IMG/VR virus record: IMGVR_UViG_3300027896_005002
Span: 124,001-188,000 of that record
DNA: 64,000 bases
Strand: one strand, 5' to 3'
Shown: piece after piece, positions 5,127 to 28,294 of the stretch
Position numbering within the stretch: position 1 is the first letter of the stretch
Layout: each line of letters opens with the position of its first letter
Position numbers and translations under genes: made by a program
The notes under the pieces: model-generated
The model's database searches: none
Told to the model about the DNA's origin: nothing
Seen by the model: the letters and a program-made list of their open reading frames with translations, nothing else

Positions 5127-5304
5127 AATTCACCTTTTCTATTTGCCGGAAAGCCAGCTGACAAAGACTATTGGACCTATGAATAATAGTACGATGATGA
5201 TGGTTGTTCTTATAGGATGTTTTTCAAAGTCCATAAATGTGCAATTATTTCCCTCAAAATGTGGCAGTCGAATTGTCTCTTTCTCTCTTGGCCGATGGAA
5301 GTGG

Positions 5305-5940
5305 CTATGCTTCGGTTTTTTCTTTTGCTTCTTTGTCGGCTTTCTTTTTCTTTTCGATGTATTGTTTGGATTTTTCCGCAACCGTTATAGTGGCCAGTTT
5401 CTTTAAGACGTCGAGGACCTTGGAGTCATTTTTTTCGAAAAGTTCTGTAAAAGATTTTTTGTCCAGGATGAATTCCACAGGTGATTTTGATTGGACCGAG
5501 CATTTGCCGAATTTGGAAGCAGATGTGGCCAAGAATTTTTGGTCCAATGTTTTGTCGATGCCGAAGTAGAATATGCAACGGCTTTTGCCATTGACTGATT
5601 TGCTCTTTTTCCGGGCCTTGAAAGCGATGACACGGAAGTCTTTGCCGGTTTCGGATTTGAGGCCAAAGATGATTTTGCCGCATTTGTATCCGAGTTTGGT
5701 CAGAGGTTTATTGTCGATTGTAAGGGTTAAGAGATGGCTTTCAAAGTCCGTTACGATTTGTTCCATTGGAGGCCGTTTGTATTCGACCTTGGTTTCGTCA
5801 ACATCTTTTTTCGGCTTCTTTTCAATGGTTGTTGCAGTGGTTACGACTTCCTTTTTCTTTTTTTCCGGTACCGGTTTTTTCTCCGGTTTTTCTGAAGCAG
5901 TTTTGTTTTTGTCGTCAATGACGTCATTGAGTTCGGGCAT
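5305..5940 (-). CDS. Lys/Glu-rich hypothetical protein
   Basis: 211-aa ORF with upstream SD (AGGAG). Confidence 0.6.
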   Translation of the reverse strand: MPELNDVIDDKNKTASEKPEKKPVPEKKKKEVVTTATTIEKKPKKDVDETKVEYKRPPMEQIVTDFESHLLTLTIDNKPLTKLGYKCGKIIFGLKSETGKDFRVIAFKARKKSKSVNGKSRCIFYFGIDKTLDQKFLATSASKFGKCSVQSKSPVEFILDKKSFTELFEKNDSKVLDVLKKLATITVAEKSKQYIEKKKKADKEAKEKTEA

Positions 5941-6718
5941 GGTAGCTCCTATTTGAAGTGTGGGAGAAGTATAAAAACCGTGCTATTTGATTTCTGATCC
6001 GTTGATCGAAATTTCTTCGATGTCGTATAATATTGATAGCTTGTTTGATGAGTTCTTTTTGGCGGTCAATGAAAGTTTGTCGTATTGCCGGTGGTACACC
6101 CTTCATTCTTTGAATTGTTTTTAAATATCTTTTTCTTCGAGGTAAGATGCCAAATTGAATACTGGTTAATGTTTGCCGATTAATAGCTCGTTTTAGAATG
6201 AGCCGGAATAAGGGGATATCATTCATCGCTTCTAAGATTTCCTTTATAAGACCCATATTATGTCGAGTCATATCATTCGATTGTTCTAAAGCTTCTAACC
6301 TTTGCAAAATTTCAAATTGAGTTACTTGACTACTTTGCTTGGTTTCAATGATGATTTGTGACTTATCCCCTAATTTTGCAAAAATATCAGGAATTGAGTC
6401 TTTTTTATTTGTAACATTCTTTAGCATATTTTTATAATCACCATTAAAGTCGTAGATTATTCACATTTCAACGTTTCCAAAAATTCTTGAACTGAGTGAG
6501 TCGTTTCCAATAAAATTTTTAGATCAAGGACATCATCTGTAGTGATTCTTGGTCCGTCTAAAAACTTCGCATGTTCTTCGGCAAATATTATACTCATTGG
6601 ATTTTGATCTGATATTTGTTTTGACATTTCTGCGTACATTTCACTAAGTCGATCAAAAAAATTCATACTCACTCCCTATTATTATAATCAATTAATTCCA
6701 TAAAGAATGTCCACATAT

Positions 6719-7306
6719 CTACGCTACTTTTTTGACTTTGATCCAGTCATTAACATCGATGCCTCGACTTAAATGTGATTTGTAAATGCTGAATTTTTTC
6801 TTAAGGACAATGCCTTCTTCAACTGAAAGATTTCTTTTGATGATTAGGTTATATAGATCCAGGAAATTGTCAGTATATTGACGAATGGAAAATACTTGGT
6901 TCTTATTTAATGGAGAAATAATCTCTGGTGCCGTCAAAAAGTGGCTATAGTATTTCCTTCTTTCGACCAATTGTAATGATCTCAGGTCCTTTCCGTTGTA
7001 ATAAGGCGTATCAAAAATGACTATAATGTTTTTGAAATCTGTCGACCGGAAATTGACTAATTCACCGTCAAAAACTGTGTCGTTTGGAATTTTCTTAAAA
7101 GCATCGACAAAAACTGAAGAATTAAAATCAATAATTGTTCCATGTCGATTGAATAATTGAATTTTGTTGGCAATTTTGAAGATAAGACAACGCCAGCCAT
7201 TGTATTTTATTTCGGCATCCCATTGTGGATTTTTGCTCAATTTGATAAAGTAGTCCGCATTGGGCCATAGCCGAATTGGTTGTGGCGGATAAAAAAACTG
7301 TATCAT
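6719..7306 (-). CDS. ATP-dependent ligase adenylation domain lacking an OB domain
   Basis: EIKYNGWR (motif I), FDGELV (III), IFDT (IIIa), EGIVLK (IV), WIKVKK (V) at the very C-terminus. Confidence 0.8.
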   Translation of the reverse strand: MIQFFYPPQPIRLWPNADYFIKLSKNPQWDAEIKYNGWRCLIFKIANKIQLFNRHGTIIDFNSSVFVDAFKKIPNDTVFDGELVNFRSTDFKNIIVIFDTPYYNGKDLRSLQLVERRKYYSHFLTAPEIISPLNKNQVFSIRQYTDNFLDLYNLIIKRNLSVEEGIVLKKKFSIYKSHLSRGIDVNDWIKVKKVA

Positions 7307-10025: not shown

Positions 10026-10077
10026 TTCCTATTAATTATAATCATGTTGACAGCGCGTACTGCGTTCAAAATGTGGC
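10026..10077 (-). promoter_or_regulatory. bipartite motif GCCAC box + TGATTATA box + SD
   Basis: Minus strand GCCACATTTTGAACGC...ATGATTATAATTAATAGGA; 33 nt between box starts. Confidence 0.75.
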
Positions 10078-10137
10078 CGTTCTTTCTATGTATTTTTAAC
10101 GTAGAAATACCGCCATTTTTTGACGACGGAAAGGAAA

Positions 10138-10908
10138 TCACCTATCAAGAATTGTAGTCTTTGAAATTGTTCCGCCTTGAGGTATTGAAATCAAATAACA
10201 GCCGTATTCTTTGCTATATTGACGGTGTATTTTGATGCCAGTTTTTTCCGAAGCGTATTCAATTGACCTATATGCATATGGAGGAACTGCAATACTTCCA
10301 TACATGGCATTCTTTTCCAAAAAGTCTAAAAGTTTGACGTAAAAATATGTTCCTTTTTTGGGAAGTGGGAAAAGAGTATTCTCAGTAGTGAACCTAGACT
10401 CTGTTCCTTGAACCAATTGATGTTTCCATTCTTTCCAATCGCCACTGATGATCCAATTGCACGGTTTTGGATAACCTTCAATGTGATAGACACAAACATC
10501 AAGACCTGAAAGCGTTTTTACAATTGATCGAGAATAAAAATTGCCCGGTCGATTTTCATCATAACCTTCTAATCGATCCAAGAATTGGAAGTGGTCAACT
10601 TCAAAAACTTCGCCATGTACAAGATAATTGAAAGGATCTTGAAGGGTAATGAAGGGAAATCCTACCGTAAAATTAAACATTCGACCTCGGATTTTATCTT
10701 TACAAATAAATTTGCCATTAGAATTTTCCATTACCTGATAATTACTTAATCCACGTAAAAGAGTCCCATATACAAAGACGAGTTTCTTCATACTTTTATC
10801 TCGATTTTTTTGAAAGATTTTTCGATCATTGGCCTTACAATAACCGCAATTTGTGGCACTTTCTTGTGACCGATGTTTATGACCTTCACGACAAAGATAT
10901 ATTGACAT
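10138..10908 (-). CDS. gamma-glutamylcyclotransferase (GGACT/AIG2-like) with extra N- and C-terminal domains
   Basis: VFVYGTLLRG..NY, VHGEVFEV, LDRLEG, Y.R; C-terminal domain shared with 22006..22425. Confidence 0.85.
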   Translation of the reverse strand: MSIYLCREGHKHRSQESATNCGYCKANDRKIFQKNRDKSMKKLVFVYGTLLRGLSNYQVMENSNGKFICKDKIRGRMFNFTVGFPFITLQDPFNYLVHGEVFEVDHFQFLDRLEGYDENRPGNFYSRSIVKTLSGLDVCVYHIEGYPKPCNWIISGDWKEWKHQLVQGTESRFTTENTLFPLPKKGTYFYVKLLDFLEKNAMYGSIAVPPYAYRSIEYASEKTGIKIHRQYSKEYGCYLISIPQGGTISKTTILDR

Positions 10909-11992
10909 TTTTGATGTCCTCCATCATTTGATTTCGAAGAAATGTTTCCAAAGCTAATGCTGTTGAATGCGATATATGACCAGCTTTTGCAAGATCCCAA
11001 ACACCCATAATTTGAAGAAGATATTTTTTGATACTCATATCTGTTCCAAATAAGATTTGATTGATCTTTTGAAAATTTCCGTAGCTTCTTCTGCTCGCAA
11101 AGCTGGTACAACGCCACCATGAGATTGAAAAGCAGCGATGACATTGTCATTTTTATCTTCAATGTAGCCGTAGTAATGGCCTTGACCGAATTCACTTACC
11201 CTTTGCGTGAGTTTGCAGTAAAAGCCGTCGATTTCCTGAATGAGAGTGTGAAATGTAATTTTTTTGTCGAATATTGTCGCAAGGTCGTCGCTCATAATGT
11301 GGCCGTACTTTCTTTGAACTGTCCGTAAGAGTCGCAAAAATTTTCCCAAACTCCAATGGGCAATTCAATGGTCGTTTTTTCGGAACCTTCGATAGCAATT
11401 GCTTTGACGATGGGCTCGCATAATTTCAGGAAGTTTTCAAATTCCTGTTTCATGCAAGTATAATCTTCAAAGCTGACGTATTTGCCATTGTTTTCTTGCA
11501 TCATGCAAGTTTTTACATCAAATCGTTTTACCATGATTTCCTCAGTTTAATTCATCGGGATTAGCGGTTTGCGATTCTTCGGCCGGCAAATTCGAAATCA
11601 AAGCATCGATTGCCTGTTGCCGTTCCAAAACCATCGCCTGATACGCTTCATAATCGTTTTGCGCCGGATTGGTCACCTTATAATCTTTCGTATAGGTGTG
11701 ACCGGTTTTGCCATCCTCATTGACCCAAATATGAAAGCCGGCAGCATCGGCCTTTTTCGAAAGAACGCGTAGCTTGGAGCATTTTTCCTCGATCTTCGTA
11801 TTGATCTCCGATTGCGTATCTTCATTACCGTCAGCTTCAGCAAATTCCACTTTGTGCTGGCCAATGGCTTTGTTGAGCATCCTATAGGCCTTGATGATTT
11901 GCAGGTTCGGGTCATCCGCGATTCCGCTTTTTGATACGATTTGTTTCGTCGCCATATCTTCTCCTTGTAAATGTGAACTGTGAACTTTTTTT

Positions 11993-12688
11993 TTACTTCG
12001 GATATTTGACCGCCGGTTGATACCTGCAAGCGGTTGTGACTTTTTCTACCGTTTCTTTTTGACCTTCCTCGATTGATTTCCGCATCTGGAAGTAATTGTA
12101 CGAAAAATCTTCCGAGGGTTTCACCGTTTTGACTACATTGAAAAAATCGTTGTATCGATCAGCGAGAAGCGTTTTCAAAGCTTCAACTTTTTCCGGGCGA
12201 AGGGTTGCGGTTTCAACAACCGTAAACATGATCTGGAATTTTTCCTTGAAGATTTTCTTCAAAGGTTCTTCCATTGCGATATCCATCGCGGAATATGATT
12301 CGCGGAATTGAATCTGCATCTGGGGTGGTTTGTAATTTTCTTCATCATCTTTGTCGGCACCTTTGATGTAAACCGTTTTGTAAAACATATCATCGTTGAA
12401 AGCTTTTTCTTTTGCTTTTGCGGCCTCTTTTTTCAGAACATCTTCGAGCTCCACTAATTCCGTTTGCAAGTTTTCGATGTTCCGGGAAATTTCGATGCAC
12501 TGATCAACGACGACTGTATAGGGTTTTTTTCCTTTATGATCTTCGGTTACCAAAGTGCAATCATCATCGAGAATGGGACTTTCAATAATAAGTTTATCCT
12601 TATTGCGGTCGTTCTGGTTCTTTTTGCTACCAGCCAACTTAATGGCAGGCAAATCTTCAATTACGACCGGTGCTGCTTTTTTCTTCAT
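11993..12688 (-). CDS. hypothetical protein, first gene behind a bipartite motif
   Basis: 231-aa ORF, SD AAGGAG. Confidence 0.6.
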   Translation of the reverse strand: MKKKAAPVVIEDLPAIKLAGSKKNQNDRNKDKLIIESPILDDDCTLVTEDHKGKKPYTVVVDQCIEISRNIENLQTELVELEDVLKKEAAKAKEKAFNDDMFYKTVYIKGADKDDEENYKPPQMQIQFRESYSAMDIAMEEPLKKIFKEKFQIMFTVVETATLRPEKVEALKTLLADRYNDFFNVVKTVKPSEDFSYNYFQMRKSIEEGQKETVEKVTTACRYQPAVKYPK

Positions 12689-12717
12689 ATATTCTCCTTT
12701 AAAAAAGTGATTTCCTT

Positions 12718-12768
12718 TTCCTATTTATATAATCAGTCATTTTTCACAAACCGCGTTCCAAAAGTGGC
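12718..12768 (-). promoter_or_regulatory. bipartite motif GCCAC box + TGATTATA box
   Basis: GCCACTTTTGGAACGCG...CTGATTATATAAATAGGA, 33-nt spacing. Confidence 0.75.
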
Positions 12769-12896
12769 TGTCGACCTAACTATTTAGTTATCCATGTTTT
12801 AGAAGAATCTGAATGGTTGTATATAGAACATAAATAAAAGTCGATGATAAAATGACACCAAAGATGAATTTGTATAATTTTCTCATATTGCTCTCC

Positions 12897-13496
12897 TCAA
12901 GCGTTGTTTACTTTTAAGAATGCACGACAATTTGGACATCGAAATAACCAATATTCTATTGATGTGGGATCGTTTTCGTCTTTTATTTTAACAGTTATCA
13001 AATCTTTTTTTGCATATTTTCTACCACAAGCCGGACATTCATCTCTTTTTATTTGTAAATTTCCTCTATTTGTTTCCCATACTTGTCCAGGTTTGCTGTT
13101 TGATTGTATCTTTCTCCAAACTTTACCAGATGCCCAGTCATGCTGTGATTGTTGATATCGTTCAAACCGTTGTCGAGCTTGTTTTTCAACTCGATAAATC
13201 GCATTGAGTAAATTTGATCGCCAACCATTTACTCTGAGAACCTTTATAGTCCTTATCCAACCAATTCTATCTGTGATATTTACCGCGCATATGCGAATTG
13301 CATCCTGACCTTTTCCGCGACCGTTACCATTTTGTTTTGAAATTGATGAATATACTTTTATAATAATTTTTGGATTCTCAATCAAGATTTTTTCATATAC
13401 ATATTCTCTGGTGGTTGAAGGTCCAGTAGCTTCTTCAAAAAAAAGATTTGCCATTACAACATTCATCTCGTTGAGAGTTATTACCGTATAATGCAT
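12897..13496 (-). CDS. hypothetical protein with C-terminal zinc ribbon
   Basis: CPACG...CPNC. Confidence 0.55.
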   Translation of the reverse strand: MHYTVITLNEMNVVMANLFFEEATGPSTTREYVYEKILIENPKIIIKVYSSISKQNGNGRGKGQDAIRICAVNITDRIGWIRTIKVLRVNGWRSNLLNAIYRVEKQARQRFERYQQSQHDWASGKVWRKIQSNSKPGQVWETNRGNLQIKRDECPACGRKYAKKDLITVKIKDENDPTSIEYWLFRCPNCRAFLKVNNA

Positions 13497-13767
13497 ATTT
13501 TCTCCTTATCGTCTTTTTGGTCTTTTGGAATTGTAACAAAGGAGTGCAGTAAATTACATCTTTTGTTTGCTTCATAATACGAGCGTGATCAACCAACATA
13601 TCAAATAGTTGGTAGCGACTTTCAGCAGATTTTGTTGTTTGAGAATAATTTCTATAAAATTTATCTGGAAAGGGATCATAAAGTACTTCAACTTTAACAG
13701 AAAATCTTTTTGTTTTAAAAGCTACTTCCGGAATTTTTGCCGTCAATTTAATTTTTTTCATTGTTTT

Positions 13768-13897
13768 TCTCCTATTATATATGATCATGTCACTACGTGT
13801 TGTGCGTTCCAAATGTGGCTGTAGAAAAAAACAAATCTACGACTGCCATTTTTGGACCGCAATTAGTGGATTGATATGATTATATAAAATAGGAGAA
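13768..13897. promoter_or_regulatory. back-to-back divergent pair of bipartite motifs
   Basis: Minus GCCACATTTGGAACGC (13819) and plus GCCATTTTTGGACCGC (13845), each followed 32 nt later by TGAT(T/C)ATAT and AGGAG. Confidence 0.8.
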
Positions 13898-13924
13898 TGA
13901 AAACAATAAAAAAGGAATGATTAT

Positions 13925-15121
13925 ATGATAACAATCGGATGTGACCCAGAGTTCCTAGTACTCGGGCCCGATAACATGGTTAAAGGCTTCAACATCGGTC
14001 ACAGTTGTCCCGCTGGAAATATTGGCACCGATCATGGTGGATCGGTTGGAGAATTAAGGCCAATGTATGGAACGCCCCGTCAGGTAACCGAAAATATTCG
14101 GGAACTTTTTCGAATCATTCACACCAAAACTCCTCGCGATAAAATTGCTGCCGGTGGCGGTGAAAAATACGGTCATTCAATCGGTGGTCATATTCACTTT
14201 GGTGGAGTACAATTGGATCATACTTACGAATCTTGCACACGACAAAGAAATCGCGGACGAGTGAGACCCTTAACACTTGATCGTTCCAGGACAGTTCACA
14301 AATTAGTTTATATGCTCGATTATTATCTCGGTCGTCGGTTGAAAAAAATTGACGGCGGACAACGACCAAAATCAGCAAATTACGGTCGTTTATCTGACAT
14401 CGAATCAAAAGGAACGGATCGATTCGAATATCGCACACCACCATCGTGGTTATCCGATCCGCAATTGACGGAATCCACTTTGGCAATTTCATATCGGATC
14501 GCGGAAATGTGGAAAGAAAATCCGCGATGTTTCGATGAAATCATCAACCGAAACAAAAGCATCGCCCGAAAAAAAGAATATGGAGTTTTAATTCCCAATT
14601 CTGGTGATCAAAGAAATTACTACTCTGAACAAGTTGCAGCTTTTAAGCGAATAGCTTTTTCGAAAACATACCGAATGGACAATGCCAATTGTTTGGACAC
14701 ATGGTTATCCGGTTCTCAAATCGCACAAATTGTCGATCGAATGTCGAAGAAGATTGCGTTGCAAATTTGCCAGATGAAATTGATAACAAATCAGGACGGC
14801 ATAGAATCAGAATCAGTCGTAAAAGTTTTGCGGTTTGCGGTACCTGAAGTAAAAATCATAGCACAGAGATTTAATTATCATCATGCTTTCCGGTCCCGAA
14901 TTAAGGATGACACAATTTACATCAGCAAAAATTTGAGACCGTATCTTAAGGTAAAACGCGGGCATCACTTCCGAGTAAAATTTGCCCAATTTGACAACAA
15001 CACTGTGGTTTATAAAACCGGCAACAGCAACATTTTGAATGAAGTAATAACAATTTTCGAAACCGGTGCAAGGAAAAAGCTTCGCAAAGCTGATGCAAAT
15101 TTGATACCGGCTCAGTCATAA
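13925..15121 (+). CDS. phiEco32-like COOH-NH2 ligase type 2 (amidoligase)
   Basis: TIGCDPEF, GELRP, GGHIHFG, YG...D, FEYRTPPSW. Confidence 0.85.
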   Translation: MITIGCDPEFLVLGPDNMVKGFNIGHSCPAGNIGTDHGGSVGELRPMYGTPRQVTENIRELFRIIHTKTPRDKIAAGGGEKYGHSIGGHIHFGGVQLDHTYESCTRQRNRGRVRPLTLDRSRTVHKLVYMLDYYLGRRLKKIDGGQRPKSANYGRLSDIESKGTDRFEYRTPPSWLSDPQLTESTLAISYRIAEMWKENPRCFDEIINRNKSIARKKEYGVLIPNSGDQRNYYSEQVAAFKRIAFSKTYRMDNANCLDTWLSGSQIAQIVDRMSKKIALQICQMKLITNQDGIESESVVKVLRFAVPEVKIIAQRFNYHHAFRSRIKDDTIYISKNLRPYLKVKRGHHFRVKFAQFDNNTVVYKTGNSNILNEVITIFETGARKKLRKADANLIPAQS

Positions 15122-15192
15122 AAAAATGAAGAAATCTGGCCAAACTGTAAAAAACTGTTGATTATAAACATATACAAAAAGAGGAGGATCAC

Positions 15193-15615
15193 ATGGCACA
15201 AGAAGTAATGCTTCAATTCGGAAATGATGATGAAGGCCTAAACTTGACCGGCACCGTCAATTTCCCAAATACGATTAACCTTCAAGGTCTCTCGGTCCTT
15301 TCAATCAAAGGTCTCGGGGAATGGCGTCATGCACCGGCCAATATCGTTCATATCAACGAACGAACGATTGAAACCTTCGGCATGAAGGAAAAGTCGAAGA
15401 ATCTTTCGAAGGTTGGTCTCAATTGGATCGGAATCAAGGCCAACAGCGACATCCTTTTGGCGCATTCGCTGCGTCACGGTCGGACCGGAACGAAAAAGGT
15501 GCAGGATTTATTGACGAAGTTTTTCAAGGCCATCGGCGCTTCTTCCGTCAAATTCAGTATCCTGGACACCGAAAAAGAAATGGCCCAACAGGCGGTACAC
15601 GACGATAATCAGTAA
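15193..15615 (+). CDS. hypothetical protein
   Basis: 140-aa ORF, SD GAGGAGG. Confidence 0.6.
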   Translation: MAQEVMLQFGNDDEGLNLTGTVNFPNTINLQGLSVLSIKGLGEWRHAPANIVHINERTIETFGMKEKSKNLSKVGLNWIGIKANSDILLAHSLRHGRTGTKKVQDLLTKFFKAIGASSVKFSILDTEKEMAQQAVHDDNQ

Positions 15616-15624
15616 TTCAGAAAC

Positions 15625-15652
15625 GGCCGTCCTAAATGGCGCCTGGACGGCC
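15625..15652 (+). terminator. GC-rich hairpin
   Basis: GGCCGTCC/GGACGGCC stem just after the 15615 stop; weak U-tract. Confidence 0.45.
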
Positions 15653-15705
15653 AATTCAATTGAACGGAATTTCCTTAACCAATAACAACCTTCAAAGGAG
15701 GGAAT

Positions 15706-16029
15706 ATGGCGACAAAAAAACTTAAGTCGCTTAAGATCGAACGCAAAAAGAAAAAGGCCAAAAAGCAGGCAAAAATTCGCTTGACCATCAAGGTCGCGAA
15801 AGTCGATCGCACGGCACGGAAAATCAAAGCCTTTGCGAAGAAATCCCTGAAATCAGCCATCAAGGGCCTCAAAGGCGCCAAGGTCAAAAAAATACCCGAA
15901 CGCCTTTACCGGAAAATCGATGCCGCAATCGCCGGCAGCGCCGATCTCAAAACAATCGTCGACGAAGCCGTCGTCAAAATGGTCAATGACAACCTTCTTC
16001 CCAAAAAGAAAGAAAAAGCGGAAGCATAA
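15706..16029 (+). CDS. histone H1-like Lys/Ala-rich basic protein
   Basis: Very basic K/A-rich N-terminal two-thirds. Confidence 0.55.
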   Translation: MATKKLKSLKIERKKKKAKKQAKIRLTIKVAKVDRTARKIKAFAKKSLKSAIKGLKGAKVKKIPERLYRKIDAAIAGSADLKTIVDEAVVKMVNDNLLPKKKEKAEA

Positions 16030-16035
16030 ACCGTC

Positions 16036-16191
16036 ATGGCCACTAAAAGAAAAAAGAAGGACACAAAATTGATTCCTTGTCCCGAATGGAATGAGGATTC
16101 AAAATGTGTCCTTCCTTCTTGGGAAAGCAAAAAGTGTGGAAAGAACTACTGCAAAATATTACCACATGTTGAAAACAAAAATATAATATGA
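16036..16191 (+). CDS. 51-aa Cys-containing small ORF (not in track)
   Basis: MATKRKKKDTKLIPCPEW...CVLP...CGKNYC. Confidence 0.45.
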   Translation: MATKRKKKDTKLIPCPEWNEDSKCVLPSWESKKCGKNYCKILPHVENKNII

Positions 16192-16210
16192 TAAAATATT
16201 ATAAGAACTA

Positions 16211-16391
16211 TCCGGCGTAGAAAGGTCGACGTAACTGTCCCTTCAAAACTAACGGAGCTTATTAAGCATTGAAGTTAGCTACGCACTTGGTAATTGAAGA
16301 AACATCAATTACATTCACTTACTAGAAAACTTAAATTGATTTTGAAGAACTGATTGAGACTGAGAATGCATGCTCGGTCTCAATTTTTTTT
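16211..16391 (+). ncRNA. candidate structured ncRNA ending in an intrinsic terminator
   Basis: Nested helices CTTCAAAA/TTTTGAAG, CTAAC/GTTAG, GCTT/AAGC, GTAATTGA/TCAATTAC; terminator stem 16354-16383 plus T-tract. Confidence 0.4.
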
Positions 16392-16410
16392 GAAATGATG
16401 ACAACCACTT

Positions 16411-17466
16411 TTAGCGACCAGTTTTGTCAAGATAAATTGGGTCTCTCTGTTTCAAGAATAATCTGCCAAAACCAACAATATATCTTTCTATCATTGGCTT
16501 TATCACTATTCCCTCTCTCAATTTATCAATCATAAAACTTTGACTATGAGAAGCTTCAGGCAATGTCCGTCCATTCAACCAATCCTTTAATGAAATATAC
16601 GTCGAAATTATAGGCACCCATATTGCTCTCAAACCTGTTCGATCTAATATAGGTTGAAGTTCATTATAACCCAAAGGCCGACCATTTATATCTATATCAA
16701 ACAACCTTGTCGTAAACTTCTTTAAATTATAATGATTACCTTGCACTCCAGGCCCTATAAACTCACTCCTTATAGTCACTGCACAATTTGGATAAAATTC
16801 TGATTGTATTATTTGAGCGGCTACTATTAATCCTTCATTTTTTGCTACTTGCCAAAAAGAATGATCTTCATGATCTGGCAAATTAACTATTCCATGACCA
16901 TGTGTACAAACACTTATTGTCTCATCTATACCAACAAAAGTAGCCATATTGCTACCTTCAATCTTCTCTGTTATCCACACTAATTCATTCATCAATATGT
17001 CAACAATATCAATATGAGTCTCACAATTCTCAATATCATAATTATAAACCATCTCAGGTCTCTGAATCAAATTACCTGTACTTGTAATTATCTCTGGCGC
17101 TTCATATTTAGTAACTCCTATAGCTGCTGTCAAATCAGTTGGTAAAGTATCAGTTTTTAAATATGTTTTTACACTATCTATGGATGTAACTAGTCCTTGA
17201 CTTATTTCACCACGTAAGCGAACAGTTTTGATTCTATTTTGATCTTTTCCAGACAAAAAATTCTTGATATTTTGTTGTTGGATAAAACCTTCAGGTAATA
17301 AAGAATCTATAGGGAAATATATTATTTCGTCACCAGTTTTATATAGACCTTTGGGTATTACAAATTGATATGTCATATCCTCGACTTGACCTAATTCAAG
17401 TTTATCTGCATTTGGATGAGGATACACTTTCGACAATTTCTTTCTTTCAACAGCAAAGGTACTCAT
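16411..17466 (-). CDS. RNA ligase, DRB0094/Rnl5 family
   Basis: N-terminal OB with HPNADKLEL and RIKTVRLRGEISQGL; ITEKIEGSN; SEFIGPGVQGN.Y; FDI; REGIVIKP. Confidence 0.9.
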   Translation of the reverse strand: MSTFAVERKKLSKVYPHPNADKLELGQVEDMTYQFVIPKGLYKTGDEIIYFPIDSLLPEGFIQQQNIKNFLSGKDQNRIKTVRLRGEISQGLVTSIDSVKTYLKTDTLPTDLTAAIGVTKYEAPEIITSTGNLIQRPEMVYNYDIENCETHIDIVDILMNELVWITEKIEGSNMATFVGIDETISVCTHGHGIVNLPDHEDHSFWQVAKNEGLIVAAQIIQSEFYPNCAVTIRSEFIGPGVQGNHYNLKKFTTRLFDIDINGRPLGYNELQPILDRTGLRAIWVPIISTYISLKDWLNGRTLPEASHSQSFMIDKLREGIVIKPMIERYIVGFGRLFLKQRDPIYLDKTGR

Positions 17467-17620
17467 TTTGATTCCTTTAGATAGATATGTGTTTCTCCCT
17501 CCGGAACTTGATTTATTTTATGCGTCAACCAACAATTAATTTACGTCGAAGATTTTTATTTTTTCTACGCGCCTAAAAGTGGCAGTTTGAACTCGAAAGT
17601 ATTTCTCCCCCTATATAATA

Positions 17621-17662
17621 TAAGGGACTCATCTTCAATTTCTTGAGAAGACAAGTCCCTTA
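17621..17662. terminator. long hairpin between RNA ligase upstream region and 17681 ORF
   Basis: TAAGGGACT/AGTCCCTTA outer stem with inner TCTTCAA/TTGAGAAGA pairing. Confidence 0.5.
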
Positions 17663-18127
17663 ATAAATAGGAGGAGGAAATTATTTAAAAATATCTGTAG
17701 TGTCTATAACATGAACTCCCGTAGAATCAAATTGAAATTGAGGTTTAGGTGTCACTGGTTTTGGAAGTGGCACAAGAAGTATCTGAATTTTGTCGAGATT
17801 TCTTTCAATTTTTTTCACAGAAACACTAATATTCAAAAGAGTAACTGTAATAATACAAAGTAAAATGACGATAATAACTTTCATATAATCCCTTTGGTTA
17901 AATCAGTTTCATAACGGAAATGAAAGGCAATTTCACGTGCATCTTTTGGAGACAAGCCTTTTGCTAATACCCACCCAAAAGCCAGAGAATACCAAATCTT
18001 GCTCTCGTGGTACTTCAATCGCAGTAGCTTTATCGGATACTTCTTGCTTAAAAGTTGTCTTTAAATCTTTGAGAAGAATTGTTCCGCTAGGAATAGTATA
18101 TTTTGAATGAGCACCGGCGAACTTCAT

Positions 18128-19087
18128 TTAATTATTTCCCTTTTTGTAAGTGATCTGTTTTGTGCCATTACTTCCGATTCGGACTATTTTCGGTGAATTA
18201 GGATCCTTAGGATTTGATCCACATCCTCGAACTATCGTCGGCTTTGACTCTCTTGAAAAAGATGTAATGCCTATCGGCCGATTTGCTTGTGTCACTTTCC
18301 GATAATTATGATCGTATTGACTTGAGGATAAGGGAGAATCATCGCTTTCATCGGAGGTATAAGTTATTGTCGCAGCTTTTTTCTTCTTCTCCTCTATAAC
18401 TCCCTTCCTCGAGAACTTATTTTTCACCACATCAAATTCCAGAAGTTCCCTTTCATAAAGGGTCGCAAAACTGATATTCGGGAATATTCCCATTTCATTT
18501 TTCACTCCCAACGTCTTCAACATGATTTTCTTTGTGGAAGCAAAAAATATTATCCCATGATACATTGCCATACATAACGGTTTCCCACCATCGGTATAAA
18601 AATACATTTTCTTCTGGGATTTCGAATACATCACCAAAGCTGCTGACCCTTCAATTGATGCTATTGCATTTTTGAGTGACGTTCTTTCCGTATAAGCGAG
18701 AATCGATTCTGAGTCGACATCACTTGTATATGGGTAATTTGCCAACTTATCTAAATGGACCGTTCCATTATGCACCAACACCCAATTTTTTGATTCAAAT
18801 GGATGTGCATTTCGATTTTCTTTGATTGTTGCAAGACTAGATGAAGCATATCGGCAATGGCCGATTACAAATCGTTCATTGCCAATTGTCGGACTGACGA
18901 AATGTTCATTGACAAAATCTTTGGCACAAATGGAAGCTTTTATAATTCCAGTTCCGAGGGAATAATATCCGGTAGCATGCTCTCCGCGTTCTTGGGTATT
19001 TATCAAACCCTTAACAAAAAGGGAGTTCAAATCAAGATCAGTTGTCGTTTCTTTTGTTGGTTTAATCCATCCAAATATTCCACACAT
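18128..19087 (-). CDS. class II glutamine amidotransferase (Ntn)
   Basis: MCGIFG with N-terminal Cys2, GHCRYAS, NAHPF, HNG, DVDSE. Confidence 0.9.
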   Translation of the reverse strand: MCGIFGWIKPTKETTTDLDLNSLFVKGLINTQERGEHATGYYSLGTGIIKASICAKDFVNEHFVSPTIGNERFVIGHCRYASSSLATIKENRNAHPFESKNWVLVHNGTVHLDKLANYPYTSDVDSESILAYTERTSLKNAIASIEGSAALVMYSKSQKKMYFYTDGGKPLCMAMYHGIIFFASTKKIMLKTLGVKNEMGIFPNISFATLYERELLEFDVVKNKFSRKGVIEEKKKKAATITYTSDESDDSPLSSSQYDHNYRKVTQANRPIGITSFSRESKPTIVRGCGSNPKDPNSPKIVRIGSNGTKQITYKKGNN

Positions 19088-19942
19088 CGTTTTTGTCTCC
19101 TTGTTAATATAATCAACAGTTTTTTCAATGACCGTTTCGTCTTTTTTGAAAATCTTCGACCCTTTGACTAACTCTACGAACTGACGCTTTTTGTTCGTCG
19201 CTTAAATGTTCGTAGCTACGACCGTAATGTTTCCTTGCTAATTCCTCATATTTTTCATTCATGATTTTCCTCACAATCTTCGCAGTTTTTTTCCGAATGT
19301 GGACATTCTTCTTTTCCGCAAACATTTGATTCTTCTTCATCATTTATTTGCAGTTTGAGTTTTTCCACTACATCAAAAAGATTCGGTCCCATTGAAACAA
19401 ATTCATTAGTAACTTGTTTGCCGTAAGCTTTCCATTGTTCATAAAGATGTGGATCAAGTCTGCGAAGAGCACTGCTAAGATCATTCATTGCTGACTCAAT
19501 GGTGTTTGCCAAAGACTGAATTTCATCAAAATCTTCTTGAATAAGACTCATAAATTTATCTCCTAAGCCGCATCAATGATTTGTAGATTTTTTGCGAATT
19601 GTTCTCGTTCAATCCTCCAACGTTCGTTTGCCGCAGTTACCTTAGTCTCATATTCTGATTTCAATTGGTTCAGACAATTATCATGATTTATGTCTGGATT
19701 GCCGATCCTCTCGTTTTGTTTGAGAGCAAAATAAACGGCATCGGCGTAAGCGGAATAACCAGGAGCTCCAGCATTTGATCGGGAAAGTTTACTAACTCTT
19801 TCCTTGACAATAACAATCCTGGCTTTCGGATATTTAACTCTTTCAGCCTTAATTTCTGCAAGAACGCTGTCTTTATCATAAGTCTTATAAAGTCCTGTAA
19901 AATGTAATCCTTGACTTAAGGCTTCTTCATTTTTCATATTTT

Positions 19943-20090
19943 CCTCCTATTTATATAATCATGAATTCTCGTTATTGCGCGTCCAAATGTGGCTGTCTCA
20001 ACCTATCCACAAACCTAACCATTTTTCACGTAGATTACTACCACATTTTGACCCGCGTTCACGGAATATGATGATTATATTAATAGGAAA
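19943..20090. promoter_or_regulatory. back-to-back divergent pair of bipartite motifs
   Basis: Minus GCCACATTTGGACGCG (19993) and plus ACCACATTTTGACCCGCG (20040), each with TGATTATA 32 nt downstream. Confidence 0.8.
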
Positions 20091-23014: not shown

Positions 23015-23767
23015 TTTTTTTCTCGCCTCAAAATGTGGCAGTTATCTCATTATCATAGATTTCTTCTTTTCATCAATCATCACACTACCGTTATATACGT
23101 CACATATTACTACTTGTAAACAACCTCAATAATCTTCTATCATCACTTCCCATCACTCTATTACACAATAATCATTATCAGTCGTCATATCGCGTATGAA
23201 GGCTGCTGACATTCATCATCTCTCTTCAGTGTTTCCTCTGGTATATAGCTATTTTCCCAAATGGCCTTTACTTTCTTCAATTTCGTCTCTATCTCTCAAT
23301 CGACGGAGATAAATTAACATTATTCTCTGTAAACTTACTTAAAAAGCATTCAAAACATCATCATCAACTTACGTGAAATATCCTCTAAAATACTAAGGCC
23401 CTCTCTTCTCAACAAATATTACCCTCTGTAAACATACAGATTATATTTCATATACCTTAAATCAGTGGGCGATAGAATAGATTTTAGTAAGTTAAAATAT
23501 ACCATACGCGCGCGCAATATCAATTAATTATAGAGAGAAGGGTTTGACGCTTTTTATCTTGTAAATACACGTAATTGCACTAGCTACGTTGCCATAAGTA
23601 AATTTACAAGAGATACCTACCCGGAGCAGATGCCGCGTTGCGTCGGGTGCCGGAGAAGTCTTGCGAGAGCCTATCGCGTTGGCCCCTACCACAACAAACC
23701 ACAATAAATGAATGGTATAGATAAAGGGTCAGTAGAAGGTCTATATATGTAGGTATGTCACTAAGAG

Positions 23768-25315: not shown

Positions 25316-28246
25316 TTATCTTCCTTGATAACTTTTACCTAGAAACCATTTATACCCACCTTTTTTCTTAAAATCTTTATATTTACCGAGTGCTCCTCTT
25401 AAATGACAGGATATTTTTCTGTTTTTGGGATTTTTCCACCATTTAATATATTCTGTATTACTTGAAAGATTTAATTTACTAATTATTCTTTGAGCCTTAT
25501 CAGTTGACCATAAATCAGAAGAAATTGTTATAAATGACACTTTTGTTTTTGAAAATTGTTTGCCGAAGAACCATTTATACCCACCTTTTTTCTTAAAATC
25601 TTTATATCTCCAAACATTAAGCAATAAATGACATGTAATTTTTCTGTTTTTGGGATTTTTCCACCATTTAACATATTCAGGATTATTTTTGAATCCTAAT
25701 TTGCTGACTACTTTTTGAGCTTTATCTAATAGCCACAAATCAGAAGTAAGATTTCTTAAAGTTTTTTTTGTTCGTTTTTTTAATATTCGTATATTGAATT
25801 GTTTGCCGAAGAACCATTTATAGCCGCCTTTTTTCTCAAAATCTTTATATCTGTGAACACGGGAGTATAAATGACATGTAATTTTTCTGTTCTTGGGATT
25901 TTTCCACCATTTAAGATATTCATAAGGATTAAAAAACTTAAATGGTCTAATTACTTTTTGAGCTTTATCTAAAGACCACAAATCAGTATAACTTTTACCG
26001 AAGAACCATTTATAGCCACCTTTTTTTTCAAAATCTTTATATCTATATACATGACTATGTAAAAGTTGTGAGATATCTTTATTTTTAGGATTTTTCCACC
26101 ATTTAACATATTCAGGATTATTTTTGAATCCTAATTTACTAATTACTTTTTGAGCTTTATCTAAAGACCACAAATCAGTATAACTTTTACCGAAGAACCA
26201 TTTGTAGCCACCTTTTTTTTCAAAATCTTTATATCTATGAGGTCGACTATGTAAATGTGATGATATTTCTTTATTTTTAGGATGTCTCCACCATTTAGCA
26301 TATTCATGATTATTTTTGAAACCCAGTTTACTGACTATTTTTTGAGCTTTATCAATTGGCCATATATCGCCATAAAGTCTTTCAACGCATTCTTTAAATT
26401 TTTGTAATGTTTCAAATGTTTCAAAAGCATTCATTGCGCTTAAGTAAATAAATGCCGGATTTTCTCTTACAATACCTCTATTTAATTTATTAATATCAAA
26501 TGTTATAAAGTCTTCTTTTGCTCTTTTCCATAATTTTGTTATAATTTGTTTTGTAAATACTGTAACATCAATATTTGTAAGATGATTATTTTCAATTTCT
26601 TCTTGAATTATTTCAGTCGTTATTTGTATTGATTGATTTTTAACTAATCGTCTATTTGTAATTAATTGTGGGTTTTCTGCAGTCCATATTTTCATTTCTT
26701 GAATGATATCATCATTAATATTATGAATTATATTTGCAGGCAATGTCTTATAATAATCTATATTATTAGATTCTTTATTTTTTTTTCTTTTAATTTTATC
26801 GTTTTTAACAGCTTTACACTGTGCATAAATATGTTCAAATTGCATTGAAAGTACTATAGAATTGTAATAATTTTCTTTTCGTTTTAATGATAATTCTTTA
26901 TCTAAATCTTCCATTGTATATGGTAAGATATGATATACAGTTGCATGATTTTTATTATTAGCTTTTCTTAATGCTCGACCCATTCTTTGTATGACATCTG
27001 TTATATTTTTCACTCCGGGTATTAATATTCTTGTTAAATATTTCCAATTAGCACCTTCTCTAAATGTTCTTAAAGCAACTACAAAATCTAACATTTCATT
27101 ATTATCACTATTATGAACTTTTTCAGTATAATCGTACTTTTCTTTTCTATCGGATTCAACTACTAATTCAATTCCTTTTAGCCATTTGCCATTTCTTTTA
27201 ATTCTTGTTAAAATACCATCATGTTCTATTTCGGGATTATCACTATTACTTATCATTTTAAAAATCATATTTACATCATTGTATTTACCAGTTGATTCTC
27301 TACTATTAACATCAGGTACATAAATCAATGATGGTTCCCACATTGAATCTCTATTAAGTATTACATTTGTTGCATCTTCATACGATCTTTCATATAATAC
27401 AAAATTGTAATCAAAATAATCAAAATTACAATCTCTTAAATGTTCGTCGTATGGATATTTAAATGTTGTTACTTTTTCCATATTTTCTTTAGATAGCAGT
27501 GACCATTTATCGCCTCTGAATGGTGTTGCTGATACTAATCCTAATTCATTATTTCTTTCAGGAAAAGAATGTACATCATGGACAATTTTTCCCATTTTAT
27601 TAAAAGTTATTAAATCTTCATTTTCATATTCTTCACATAATAAATGTTGAACTTCATCAATTGTGTAAAGTATGTATGTAAAAGCTTCAGGATTTAAATC
27701 ATAAGCTAGAACTAAAGTAGCATTACAGCATACTATTATTCTATCTAAAGGATCTTTATTTCTATAAGATGTAATTGCAGTTAATAATCTTTTAGCATTT
27801 GATAAATCTGATTTATCAATACCAATAATTTCAACATCCCAATTTATTTGAGATTTATCAGGTGCTATTATTTTCATGGGATTGAAACTTCGTGTAATTT
27901 GTCTTTGTGGTGTTGATATGATATTGAATAATTTTGGATTTTTTTGTAATTTTTTATAATTTAGAATAGCTATTTCAACAGCTTTTCCTGCGCCAGTTGG
28001 AGCATCAATTAAATAGTATTTTTTATTAAGTAATTTGTTGTAACAGTTTAATTGCCAAGGTTTTAATATAAGTGGTTGACCGGGTATTGATGGTTGAGGA
28101 ATTGAAATTGTTTTGTCAAAATCATCAATACAAAAAGATCTTTTAATTCGAACTCGATTACCGGGTTTTCCAAAAATTTGATTTTCATTACGCGAAATAC
28201 GATTACCGTCATCATCAAATAATGAATCAATGTCAATTTTATTCAT
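25316..28246 (-). CDS. SF2 helicase/ATPase with five C-terminal tandem repeats (integrase-repeat-unit-like)
   Basis: APTGAGK, DEVQH, SATP, QRMGRALR; repeats W..DKAQK...LGF....EY.KWW..PKN.......RYKDF.KKGGYKWFFGK. Confidence 0.85.
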   Translation of the reverse strand: MNKIDIDSLFDDDGNRISRNENQIFGKPGNRVRIKRSFCIDDFDKTISIPQPSIPGQPLILKPWQLNCYNKLLNKKYYLIDAPTGAGKAVEIAILNYKKLQKNPKLFNIISTPQRQITRSFNPMKIIAPDKSQINWDVEIIGIDKSDLSNAKRLLTAITSYRNKDPLDRIIVCCNATLVLAYDLNPEAFTYILYTIDEVQHLLCEEYENEDLITFNKMGKIVHDVHSFPERNNELGLVSATPFRGDKWSLLSKENMEKVTTFKYPYDEHLRDCNFDYFDYNFVLYERSYEDATNVILNRDSMWEPSLIYVPDVNSRESTGKYNDVNMIFKMISNSDNPEIEHDGILTRIKRNGKWLKGIELVVESDRKEKYDYTEKVHNSDNNEMLDFVVALRTFREGANWKYLTRILIPGVKNITDVIQRMGRALRKANNKNHATVYHILPYTMEDLDKELSLKRKENYYNSIVLSMQFEHIYAQCKAVKNDKIKRKKNKESNNIDYYKTLPANIIHNINDDIIQEMKIWTAENPQLITNRRLVKNQSIQITTEIIQEEIENNHLTNIDVTVFTKQIITKLWKRAKEDFITFDINKLNRGIVRENPAFIYLSAMNAFETFETLQKFKECVERLYGDIWPIDKAQKIVSKLGFKNNHEYAKWWRHPKNKEISSHLHSRPHRYKDFEKKGGYKWFFGKSYTDLWSLDKAQKVISKLGFKNNPEYVKWWKNPKNKDISQLLHSHVYRYKDFEKKGGYKWFFGKSYTDLWSLDKAQKVIRPFKFFNPYEYLKWWKNPKNRKITCHLYSRVHRYKDFEKKGGYKWFFGKQFNIRILKKRTKKTLRNLTSDLWLLDKAQKVVSKLGFKNNPEYVKWWKNPKNRKITCHLLLNVWRYKDFKKKGGYKWFFGKQFSKTKVSFITISSDLWSTDKAQRIISKLNLSSNTEYIKWWKNPKNRKISCHLRGALGKYKDFKKKGGYKWFLGKSYQGR
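25319..26370 (-). repeat. five coding tandem repeats (core 192 nt / 64 aa)
   Basis: First Trp codon of units 1-3 at 26362, 26170, 25978 (192-nt period); units 4-5 separated by longer linkers. Confidence 0.9.
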
Positions 28247-28294
28247 GTTATTATAATCACGTAGAAATACGTAGAATATGTGCTTGCTATGCTA

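What the first reader, a model, noticed from the sequence alone, without database searches (positions are those of the whole stretch)
10026..20090. Fixed-spacing bipartite promoter-like motif (GCCAC box ... TGATTATA box) heading gene blocks
Seen: six copies of CWGCCACWTTT(T)GR(A/C)CGC are followed 32-33 nt (start to start) by TGATTATAWWAATAGGA and a start codon: minus at 10077, 12768, 13819, 19993; plus at 13845, 20040. Two are back-to-back divergent pairs. TGATTATA alone also precedes other genes (~6435, 6685, 19105, 28255, 35105, 51435). It does not match a sigma70 TTGACA -35, and the TG sits one base off the extended -10 position. Inference: recognition by a phage sigma factor, RNA polymerase or activator, defining a regulon.
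Basis: seen in the sequence. Interest (0 to 1): 0.6.

Follow-up and report, generated by a model that had tools for sequence, protein, structure and literature searches.

The report
Module-specific promoter class in huge phage
The repeated two-part motif is real and is almost certainly a phage promoter class, kept in related uncultured huge phages, that switches on one conserved 20-kb gene module; what reads it is still unknown.

Summary
The window is part of a 416-kb uncultured freshwater phage. The two boxes pair at 32-33 nt eight times in the genome (about 0.07 expected).

The motif is kept at matching and extra sites in at least five related phage contigs whose proteins are only 37-60% identical and whose GC is 35-49%. 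Of 26 such sites, 24 are followed within 13-62 nt by a ribosome site and an ORF.

TGATTATA is a phage-wide -10-like element shared with a second class (TCTAYGAY-N8-TGATTATA). There an ATG often sits exactly 5 nt after the box, implying leaderless mRNAs. This fixes the register: GATTAT as hexamer, start at the sixth base after the box.

In that register the conserved core ACrGCCAyWTTTkGA spans about -49 to -34, centred near -41.5. That is too far upstream for a sigma-70 -35 element. About ten extra copies without a -10 box also occur.

My best reading is an activator-type site plus a special -10, read by host core polymerase with a phage factor. The phage encodes sigma-like proteins; no polymerase gene was found. 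No RNA data exist, so no start site is shown.

This is a new member of a known kind, of moderate interest.

The parts
10026..10082 (-). Class A promoter 1: box (G1 at 10077), TGATTATA at 10044-10037, AATAGGA. Heads 9717-9995 (92-aa SWIM-like zinc-finger protein), 9273-9545, 9018-9260 and 7897-9018 (DnaJ plus ligase-like).
12718..12773 (-). Class A promoter 2: G1 at 12768, TGATTATA at 12735-12728. Heads 11993-12688, 11542-11955, 11035-11349 and 10138-10908 (GGACT domain).
13769..13824 (-). Class A promoter 3: G1 at 13819, TGATCATA at 13787-13780. Heads 13435-13761 and 12897-13496. It is back to back with promoter 4.
13840..13895 (+). Class A promoter 4: G1 at 13845, TGATTATA at 13877-13884. Heads the phiEco32-like COOH-NH2 ligase gene 13925-15121.
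   Evidence: matching sites in L052, L053, L054 and L075
19944..19998 (-). Class A promoter 5: G1 at 19993, TGATTATA at 19961-19954. Heads 19563-19937 and 19255-19551, then the glutamine amidotransferase gene 18128-19087.
   Evidence: matching site in L020
20035..20089 (+). Class A promoter 6: box from 20040, TGATTATA at 20072-20079. Heads 20101-20328, 20526-20861, 20858-21391 (GmrSD_N/ParB-like), 21388-21810 (weak receiver-like) and on to 23014.
2429..2447 (+). Orphan GCCAC box with no -10 box at 32-33 nt.
5250..5268 (-). Orphan GCCAC box. Its position matches a complete class A promoter in relatives L026/L032.
6930..6948 (-). Orphan GCCAC box inside the ligase-like ORF 6719-7306.
11288..11306 (-). 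Orphan GCCAC box (GGCCACATTATGAGCG).
10109..10127 (+). Orphan GCCAC-like box back to back with promoter 1.
17568..17586 (-). Orphan GCCAC box about 117 nt upstream of the RNA ligase gene 16411-17466.
23024..23042 (-). Orphan GCCAC box at the end of the plus-strand block, 6 nt from the right inverted-repeat arm.
6427..6458 (-). Class B promoter (TCTACGAC, 8 nt, TGATTATA at 6440-6433) with ATG at 6427, 5 nt after the box. Predicted leaderless mRNA for 5924-6427 and 5305-5940.
28246..28277 (-). Class B promoter (TGATTATA at 28259-28252) with ATG at 28246. Predicted leaderless start of the 976-aa ORF 25316-28246.
15159..15166 (+). TGATTATA box without a GCCAC box, preceded by AAAAAACTGT. Heads 15193-15615. 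The same arrangement is kept in L052.
19108..19115 (-). TGATTATA box without a GCCAC box upstream of the amidotransferase gene. Also kept upstream of its homologs in L020 and L054.
6683..6690 (-). TGATTATA box followed by AATAGGG, heading 6457-6666. TGGACA lies 18 nt before GATTAT.
5305..5940 (-). Gene of P0106: 211 aa, Lys-rich tails, conserved core. Candidate reader of the box; a lead only.
2845..2881 (.). Left arm of the perfect 37-nt inverted repeat that brackets the module.
23045..23081 (.). Right arm of the perfect 37-nt inverted repeat.

Best explanation
The six sites, plus two more elsewhere in the genome, are promoters of one phage-specific class that drives a conserved module of about 20 kb. 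The module carries ATP-dependent ligase-like genes, an RNA ligase, a COOH-NH2 ligase, a glutamine amidotransferase, a GGACT enzyme and a ParB/GmrSD_N-like protein.

Each promoter has two parts.

1. A -10/start module that the phage also uses at other promoters: TGAyTAtA. GATTAT acts as the -10 hexamer (A at -11, T at -7), T and G sit at -13/-12, and transcription starts at the sixth base after the box, the A of AATAGGA.

2. A class-specific upstream element with core ACrGCCAyWTTTkGA, lying at about -49 to -34 and centred near -41.5.

I infer that a sequence-specific DNA-binding activator sits on the upstream element in the class II position. It would recruit host core RNA polymerase carrying a sigma that accepts the TGAyTAtA -10. 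That sigma is probably the phage's own 253-aa sigma-70-family protein.

What is shown: the motif, its fixed spacing, its orientation to genes, its confinement to the module, and its conservation in relatives. What is inferred: the start site, the activator, and the identity of the sigma.

The stated confidence is for the whole statement. 'Promoter class defining a regulon' alone I put at about 0.8; the activator-plus-sigma mechanism at about 0.5.
For: Statistics
- 8 paired sites against about 0.07 expected.
- The box matrix gives 18 hits against 1 in the control, 14 of them in window 2.4-23.1 kb.

Orientation
- 24 of 26 promoter-type sites, in this phage and seven related contigs, have a ribosome site and an ORF of at least 40 aa starting 13-62 nt after the -10 box. 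Only 5 of 31 orphan boxes do.

Conservation
- The same two-part motif with 32-33 nt spacing occurs at matching and extra sites in L020, L018, L026, L052, L053, L054 and L075.
- In those contigs the module proteins are 37-60% identical and GC ranges from 0.35 to 0.49. The spacers between the boxes differ.
- The motif is absent from unrelated phages with a distant amidotransferase and from the huge phages LR756500/LR756501.

Shared -10
- TGATTATA occurs 89 times in the genome. 44% of copies are followed by an ORF start within 70 nt, against 6-16% for control words.

Register
- Class B (TCTAYGAY-N8-TGATTATA) has 21 hits against 2 in the control.
- Ten of them have an ATG 5-7 nt (mostly 5) after the box that opens an ORF of 64-976 aa with no ribosome site.
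- One class A site in L075 does the same at the called gene start.
- A canonical TGnTATAAT followed 6 nt later by the ATG of the nusG-like gene gives the same hexamer-to-ATG distance.

Geometry
- Information content is high from 3 nt before G1 to 11 nt after it. It is low over the stretch that would be the -35 hexamer at 17-nt spacing.

Orphan boxes are enriched: about 10 in the genome against about 1 expected.

Sigma-70-type promoters are not enriched: 62 against 57 expected, and 1.04 against 1.02 per kb.

The phage encodes a sigma-70-family protein, a protein with two region-4 domains and a NusG/LoaP-like factor. No RNA polymerase was detected.
Against: - There are no RNA data for this uncultured phage, so no transcription start has been observed.
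- The start-site register rests on the leaderless-gene argument alone.
- The box is asymmetric and no binding protein has been identified. The best candidate (P0106) has only a middling fold match: Z 8.5 to YjbR and about 5 to the MotA C-terminal domain, a range the tool itself calls common. It has no sequence support.
- The second half of the box (TTTkGAc) resembles TTGACA. If the hexamer were read as nATGAT, it would lie 17-18 nt upstream, which allows a purely sigma-based reading (and my counts).
- Site selection by matrix and regular expression inflates the apparent invariance of some columns.
- The record is about 77% complete, so a polymerase or another sigma could be in the missing part.
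Confidence: 0.5

Rival explanations
1. A single dedicated phage sigma factor reads both boxes. The GCCAC/TTTkGAc element is its -35 element and TGAyTAtA its -10, with no separate activator.
For: - The phage and its relatives encode a conserved sigma-70-family protein: 253 aa, with 35 homologs at 41-76% identity. One homolog is on the 261,940-bp contig that also carries the module and the motif.
- In relative L077 a second sigma gene lies directly beside the module.
- Spacing is strict at 32-33 nt.
- TTTkGAc is TTGACA-like. The sigma gene itself has no TGATTATA upstream.
Against: - The most conserved columns lie at -49 to -34. The normal -35 position is poorly conserved.
- In the GATTAT register, the spacer from TTkGAc to the hexamer is 20-21 nt, longer than known sigma-70-family spacers (established knowledge).
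- The same -10 is shared with class B and with box-less promoters.
- Orphan boxes without a -10 are enriched.
- The module-adjacent sigma of L077 has no homolog in the 416 kb held.
Confidence: 0.25
2. The GCCAC box is an operator for a repressor or roadblock protein. It silences or delimits the module rather than activating it, and TGATTATA alone is the promoter.
For: - Box-less TGATTATA promoters exist.
- Many orphan boxes lie at operon ends. In relatives, six or seven sit next to terminator hairpins.
- Boxes occur in back-to-back pairs.
Against: - The strict 32-33 nt phasing to the -10, kept across distant relatives, is what is expected for recruitment. A repressor usually overlaps the -10 or the start.
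- Class A promoters lack any other upstream element that could explain their activity.
Confidence: 0.1
3. The motif is the promoter of a phage-encoded single-subunit or otherwise unrecognised RNA polymerase.
For: - Conservation runs almost unbroken from the TGAyTAtA box into the first transcribed bases (TAGGAAAAGGA). This is reminiscent of T7-type promoters, which end in TATAGGGAGA.
- The record is incomplete, and several large ORFs have no recognised family.
Against: - No hit to RNA polymerase families in six-frame searches, though the T7-type search had no positive control.
- None among 20 large ORFs scanned against Pfam, nor among four unknown large ORFs compared with PDB sequences.
- A bipartite layout with a variable 14-16 nt spacer, plus sigma and NusG-like genes, points to the multisubunit host enzyme.
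Confidence: 0.05
4. The repeats are not regulatory. They would be ends or remnants of a small mobile element, or recombination sites.
For: The module is bracketed by a unique perfect 37-nt inverted repeat, and orphan boxes lie near both ends.
Against: - The repeats share only the two short boxes; the spacers are unrelated.
- They always face a gene start.
- They are conserved box by box in relatives that lack the inverted repeat.
Confidence: 0.03

Closest known systems
Phage T4 middle promoters (MotA box plus sigma-70 -10; MotA/AsiA sigma appropriation)
   Same: A phage promoter class built from a -10 element and a phage-specific upstream box that replaces the -35 element. That box is read by a phage DNA-binding activator on host polymerase. 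The candidate protein P0106 has a weak fold resemblance to the MotA C-terminal double-wing domain.
   Different: The box here is centred near -41.5, not -30, and has a core of about 15 bp. The -10 is not the host consensus. No MotA or AsiA homolog was seen by sequence. Class B (box at about -29 to -22) is closer to MotA-box geometry than class A is.
Class II activator-dependent bacterial promoters (CRP/FNR at -41.5; PhoB boxes replacing -35)
   Same: The site is centred near -41.5 and overlaps the -35 region of a promoter that lacks a -35 consensus, with strict phasing to the -10. It has two half-elements about 10 bp apart separated by a T-rich stretch, loosely like PhoB boxes.
   Different: The sequence is neither a palindrome nor a clear direct repeat. 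The factor is unknown. The context is a phage module.
Promoters of phage-encoded sigma factors (SPO1 gp28 and gp33/34, phiEco32 gp36, T4 gp55)
   Same: A phage with its own sigma-70-family gene and a non-host -10 consensus. GATTAT resembles the SPO1 late -10 GATATT in composition (from memory, not tested).
   Different: No link between the sigma and the motif was tested. The upstream conservation lies outside the usual -35 position.
Leaderless mRNAs (for example lambda cI from PRM)
   Same: The ATG sits at the predicted start, 7 nt after the last base of the -10 hexamer, with no ribosome site. Seen at ten class B sites and one class A site.
   Different: Here this is a recurrent design within one phage promoter family. 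It is inferred from sequence only.

Membership tests
Sigma-70 (housekeeping) promoter | TTGACA-like hexamer 17 +/- 1 nt upstream of a TATAAT-like hexamer | tested here: not met
   In the GATTAT register, TTkGAc lies 20-21 nt upstream. Only two of the six sites reach even 9 of 12 matches, and only in a shifted register. Sigma-70-type matches are not enriched in the region or in intergenic DNA.
Sigma-70 (housekeeping) promoter | -10 hexamer with A at position 2 and T at position 6, about 7 nt before the start | tested here: met
   GATTAT has A2 and T6 (T6 in 24 of 26 sites). It ends 6 bases before the ATG of the leaderless genes. The start itself is inferred.
Extended -10 promoter (TGnTATAAT) | TG at -15/-14, one base upstream of the hexamer | tested here: not met
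   In the GATTAT register TG falls at -13/-12. In a TATAWW register it is two bases upstream of the hexamer, and the start would then fall only 3 nt after the hexamer in leaderless genes.
Class II activator-dependent promoter | Activator site centred near -41.5 that overlaps and replaces the -35 element | tested here: met
   The conserved core spans -49/-48 to -35/-34 relative to the inferred start. This depends on the inferred start.
Class II activator-dependent promoter | A DNA-binding activator that binds the site and is needed for transcription | not testable with these tools
   There are candidates only: P0106, the protein with two region-4 domains, and a wHTH protein at 4130-4561.
T4 MotA-type middle promoter | MotA box centred at -30, about 12 nt upstream of the -10 | tested here: not met
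   The class A box is centred near -41.5. Class B is nearer, at about -29 to -22.
T4 MotA-type middle promoter | MotA and AsiA homologs encoded by the phage | tested here: inconclusive
   No PHROG or Pfam hit among the module proteins. The P0106 core matches the MotA C-terminal domain only at Z 5.1-5.2.
Single-subunit (T7-like) polymerase promoter | One contiguous conserved block of about 20 bp running into the start, plus a cognate polymerase gene | tested here: not met
   The layout is bipartite with a variable spacer. No polymerase gene was found, with caveats.
Promoter (any class) | A mapped transcription start just downstream | not testable with these tools
   Only the source DNA run holds the sequence; there is no RNA run.

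The most novel reading that the evidence does not exclude
The 20-kb module would be a self-contained expression cassette. In this phage it is bracketed by the genome's only long perfect inverted repeat and sequenced at twice the depth of its flanks. A small basic protein with a MotA-like double-wing fold (P0106), made from a leaderless class B transcript, would bind the GCCAC box at -41.5 and hand host polymerase to the class A promoters. That would be a second, independently evolved sigma-appropriation-like middle-gene switch, found in a clade of huge freshwater phages.
Probability: 0.1. Interest if true: 0.7.

Novelty: new member of a known kind. Interest (0 to 1): 0.45.

Why it matters
Almost nothing is known about how uncultured huge phages schedule their genes. 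This work gives:
- a concrete, testable promoter grammar: a shared TGAyTAtA -10 with a fixed start, two class-specific upstream boxes, and frequent leaderless genes;
- a defined regulon, the conserved ligase / COOH-NH2 ligase / amidotransferase module;
- a short list of candidate factors, all recoverable from sequence alone across several related phages.

The grammar can be used to annotate transcription units in this clade and to choose constructs for in vitro transcription. The principle, phage-specific promoter classes, is textbook, so the finding is useful rather than surprising.

Tried and rejected
**Searches that found nothing**
- Near-identical DNA and protein searches of the GenBank phage collection gave nothing for the region or for the COOH-NH2 ligase. 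The 821-aa protein matched only LR756500/LR756501/LR756503, at 43-44% identity. LR756500 and LR756501 were scanned and lack both motifs.
- IMG/VR scans with the motif found only an unrelated coding-sequence family. The same family accounts for 7 of the 18 metagenome hits.
- Distant amidotransferase loci from IMG/VR lack the motif; they served as a negative control.
- Rfam and tRNA scans of the window found nothing.
- A literature search for the -10 word returned nothing relevant.
- No RNA runs exist.

**RNA polymerase**
- Family searches for RNA polymerase, Pfam scans of 20 large ORFs, and PDB sequence searches of 4 unknown large ORFs gave no polymerase.

**Module proteins**
- PHROGs and Pfam on about 40 module proteins gave no sigma or known activator. 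The only hits of that kind are a wHTH protein (4130-4561), which has no homolog in the related loci I hold, and a weak receiver-like domain.
- For P0106, Foldseek against PDB gave no match. A profile against PDB sequences, Pfam on 30 members, and the ESM Atlas were all uninformative.

**Other**
- I could not search the relatives' whole contigs for the sigma, because those records are not held.
- The over-represented word CCAGAATA is a coding repeat at the start of the genome, not a promoter.
- I considered resemblances to Fur, LexA/Cheo and Spo0A boxes from memory and dropped them: only fragments match.


Full report
**Context**

The window is bases 124,001-188,000 of a single 416,029-bp IMG/VR virus record, the metagenome contig Ga0209777_10000009. 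The record is linear, about 77% complete by CheckV, 31% GC, and comes from a freshwater metagenome. Ribosome sites are strong AGGAGG-type. The only related named records are uncultured huge phages LR756500/LR756501/LR756503, at 43-44% identity for one 821-aa protein.

**The observation**

All six sites are present at the stated coordinates, with 32 or 33 nt from the first base of the GCCAC-type box to the T of TGATTATA (TGATCATA at one site). Then come 2-3 nt, AATAGGA, a ribosome site and an ATG. Both divergent pairs are real. Both words are over-represented in the window: 19 against 6.9, and 10 against 1.1.

The paired pattern occurs 8 times in the genome: the six sites plus genome positions 107,611(-) and 342,923(+). 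The mean is 0.075 in order-3 Markov genomes, and 0.064 is expected from independent halves. A weight matrix of the upstream box finds 18 sites above 16 bits against 1 in a reversed-sequence control. Fourteen of them lie between window 2432 and 23039.

**Conservation in relatives**

One pattern scan of JGI metagenome contigs returned several kinds of hit:
- my own contig;
- a 98%-identical 22.6-kb contig from another sample;
- short contigs from other samples that carry the same two-part motif in front of different or diverged genes. L020 has a 47-50% identical amidotransferase and a matching divergent pair. L018 has another divergent pair. L026/L032 also carry it;
- seven hits that were an unrelated conserved coding sequence, which I set aside.

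A word search with the COOH-NH2 ligase gave 60-odd homologs. I fetched four loci (L052, L053, L054, L075; 37-60% identity; GC 0.35-0.49). All four have the same gene module, and all four carry the motif upstream of the ligase gene, upstream of its divergent neighbour, and at several further genes.

Pooling sites gives 26 promoter-type sites in eight sequences, with spacing 32 (11 sites) or 33 (15 sites) and unrelated spacers. Of these, 24 are followed by a ribosome site and the start of an ORF of at least 40 aa within 13-62 nt. One of the two exceptions is a leaderless gene. Unrelated phages with distant amidotransferases, and LR756500/LR756501, lack the motif.

This is strong comparative evidence that the motif is functional and acts on the downstream genes.

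**TGATTATA is a shared -10 element**

Genome-wide there are 89 copies. 44% are followed within 70 nt by an ORF start, against 6-16% for reverse-complement, reversed or one-mismatch control words. Intergenic enrichment is about fourfold. Box-less copies are kept upstream of matching genes in relatives, namely the amidotransferase, the 140-aa gene and the DnaJ-ligase gene.

**A second class and the register**

A second upstream element, TCTAYGAY, lies exactly 8 nt before TGATTATA at 21 places, against 2 in the control. At ten of these an ATG lies 5 nt (occasionally 6-7) after the box and opens an ORF of 64-976 aa with no ribosome site. Examples in the window are the ORFs starting at 6427 and 28246.

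One class A site in L075 has the same design, and its ATG is the called gene start. The nusG-like gene of this phage has a canonical TGnTATAAT followed 6 nt later by its ATG.

The simplest reading is leaderless mRNAs. That fixes GATTAT as the hexamer (A at -11, T at -7) and the start at the sixth base after the box. At class A sites that base is the A of AATAGGA. The start is inferred, not observed.

**Geometry of the upstream box**

In that register the columns with high information are ACrGCCAyWTTTkGA, at -49/-48 to -35/-34, centred near -41.5. The stretch where a -35 hexamer would lie at 17-nt spacing is only weakly GC-rich. TTkGAc resembles TTGACA but lies 20-21 nt from GATTAT.

A shifted reading is possible at about half the sites: nATGAT as hexamer, with 17-18 nt spacing. 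But that hexamer is not conserved, and the reading does not fit the leaderless genes (and my counts). Sigma-70-type promoter matches are not enriched in the region (62 against 57) or in intergenic DNA (1.04 against 1.02 per kb).

Box copies without a -10 ("orphans") number about ten in this genome against about one expected. They are also common in relatives.

**What could read it**

- No RNA polymerase gene was found in six-frame family searches, in Pfam scans of 20 large ORFs, or in PDB sequence searches of four unknown large ORFs. The T7-type search had no positive control, and a quarter of the genome may be missing.
- The phage encodes a 253-aa sigma-70-family protein next to a NusG/LoaP-like protein and DnaG. 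It also encodes a 304-aa protein with two sigma region-4 domains and no region 2.
- The sigma has 35 homologs at 41-76% identity. One is on the 261,940-bp contig that also has the module and the motif.
- In that relative a second sigma lies beside the module, but it has no homolog in my 416 kb.
- Among module proteins conserved across relatives, P0106 (window 5305-5940) stands out. It has Lys-rich tails and 66 homologs on the same contigs as the ligase. Its core is confidently modelled.
- P0106's best structural matches are YjbR (Z 8.5) and DUF419 (Z 8.4), with the T4 MotA C-terminal domain at Z 5.1-5.2. These Z values are in the range the tool calls common, and sequence profiles give nothing. 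It is a lead only.

**Best explanation and rivals**

I put about 0.8 on "promoter class defining a module regulon". I put about 0.5 on the specific mechanism: an activator at -41.5 plus a sigma, probably the phage's, that reads TGAyTAtA on host core polymerase.

The main rival is a single phage sigma that reads both boxes (0.25). A repressor or roadblock role for the box (0.1), an unrecognised phage polymerase (0.05) and a non-regulatory repeat (0.03) are less likely, for the reasons given in their entries.

**Comparison with known systems**

It works like a phage temporal promoter class. The closest parallels are T4 middle promoters (a -10 plus a phage-specific box in place of the -35) and bacterial class II activator promoters (a site at -41.5). 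It is not a sigma-70 consensus promoter, not an extended -10 promoter and not a T7-type promoter, as the membership rows show. It cannot be filed under MotA-type control because the box position differs and no MotA or AsiA homolog was shown.

**Novelty and value**

This is a new member of a known kind. It provides a usable promoter grammar and a regulon for a clade of uncultured huge phages, along with recurrent leaderless genes. I rate interest at 0.45.

The reads tool was given 5,001 letters. Only genetic code 11 was used.

Noticed in passing
window 2845-2881 and 23045-23081: A perfect 37-nt inverted repeat brackets the 20.2-kb module. It is the only exact inverted repeat of 25 nt or more (over 500 nt apart) in the 416-kb record. 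In the source run's Logan contigs the segment between the arms is one 20,223-nt contig at k-mer depth 48. The two flanks are at 23-24 and the repeat itself at 79. The segment's GC is 0.38 against 0.31 for the flanks. This could be an invertible or amplified segment, or just GC bias.
   Followed up: partly
window 6427-6458, 28246-28277; genome 40515, 111615, 121738, 123275, 192074, 272769, 280434 and others: A second promoter class, TCTAYGAY-N8-TGATTATA, has 21 hits against 2 in the control. Ten have an ATG 5-7 nt after the box and no ribosome site, so leaderless mRNAs are predicted, including the one for the 976-aa ORF.
   Followed up: yes
L020 3504(+), L053 3009(+) and 13075(-), L075 5788(+) and 5617(-), L054 14074(-); window 17568-17586, 23024-23042: Orphan GCCAC boxes often lie at operon ends. 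In relatives, six or seven are followed after 12-20 nt by an A-tract and a strong hairpin, which is an intrinsic terminator for the opposite strand. Their role is unexplained.
   Followed up: partly
window 1870-2490 and 23082-23790: Two long non-coding stretches flank the module. The left one is full of gagatctc and gtagag words; the right one is GC-rich near 23520-23700. Neither has an Rfam match at gathering score. In relative L077 a gene-free stretch of about 2.2 kb follows the module-adjacent sigma gene.
   Followed up: partly
window 30234-32699 (-): An 821-aa protein matches the major vault protein shoulder and repeat domains (PF11978 at 7e-21, PF17795 at 7e-10). It is also the protein shared with huge phages LR756500/LR756501.
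   Followed up: no
window 9717-9995 (-): A 92-aa protein with a SWIM-like CxC...CxH zinc-finger pattern is the first gene of class A promoter 1. It is the best-conserved module protein, at 72-79% identity in relatives.
   Followed up: partly
genome 230749-234336, 255775-258756, 246236-248644 (L055-L057): The ribonucleotide reductase, DNA polymerase III alpha and RecA genes each carry intein or homing-endonuclease domains.
   Followed up: no
genome 272710-275874 (L007) and relative L076: A conserved cluster of DnaG primase, a sigma-70-family protein and a NusG/LoaP-like factor. The nusG-like gene has a canonical TGnTATAAT 6 nt before its ATG, another predicted leaderless gene.
   Followed up: partly
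genome 1-5300: About 100 same-strand copies of CCAGAATA and related 9-nt-periodic words. They appear to be a long repetitive coding region on the minus strand (Gly/Tyr/Ser-rich repeats). My crude gene caller mislabelled it as partly intergenic.
   Followed up: partly
window 25355-26207: The 976-aa ORF contains several internal repeats, seen as recurring CATTTATA..CCACCTTTTTT words spaced 192-435 nt apart. It has no Pfam or PDB sequence match.
   Followed up: no
genome 106321-107508 (-) and 342996-344402 (+): The two class A promoters outside the module head ORFs of 395 and 468 aa whose N-termini look like signal peptides.
   Followed up: no
L077 8426-9250: In the 261,940-bp relative, a second sigma-70-family gene (274 aa, regions 2 and 4) lies directly beside the module. 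It has no homolog in the 416 kb held for this phage.
   Followed up: partly
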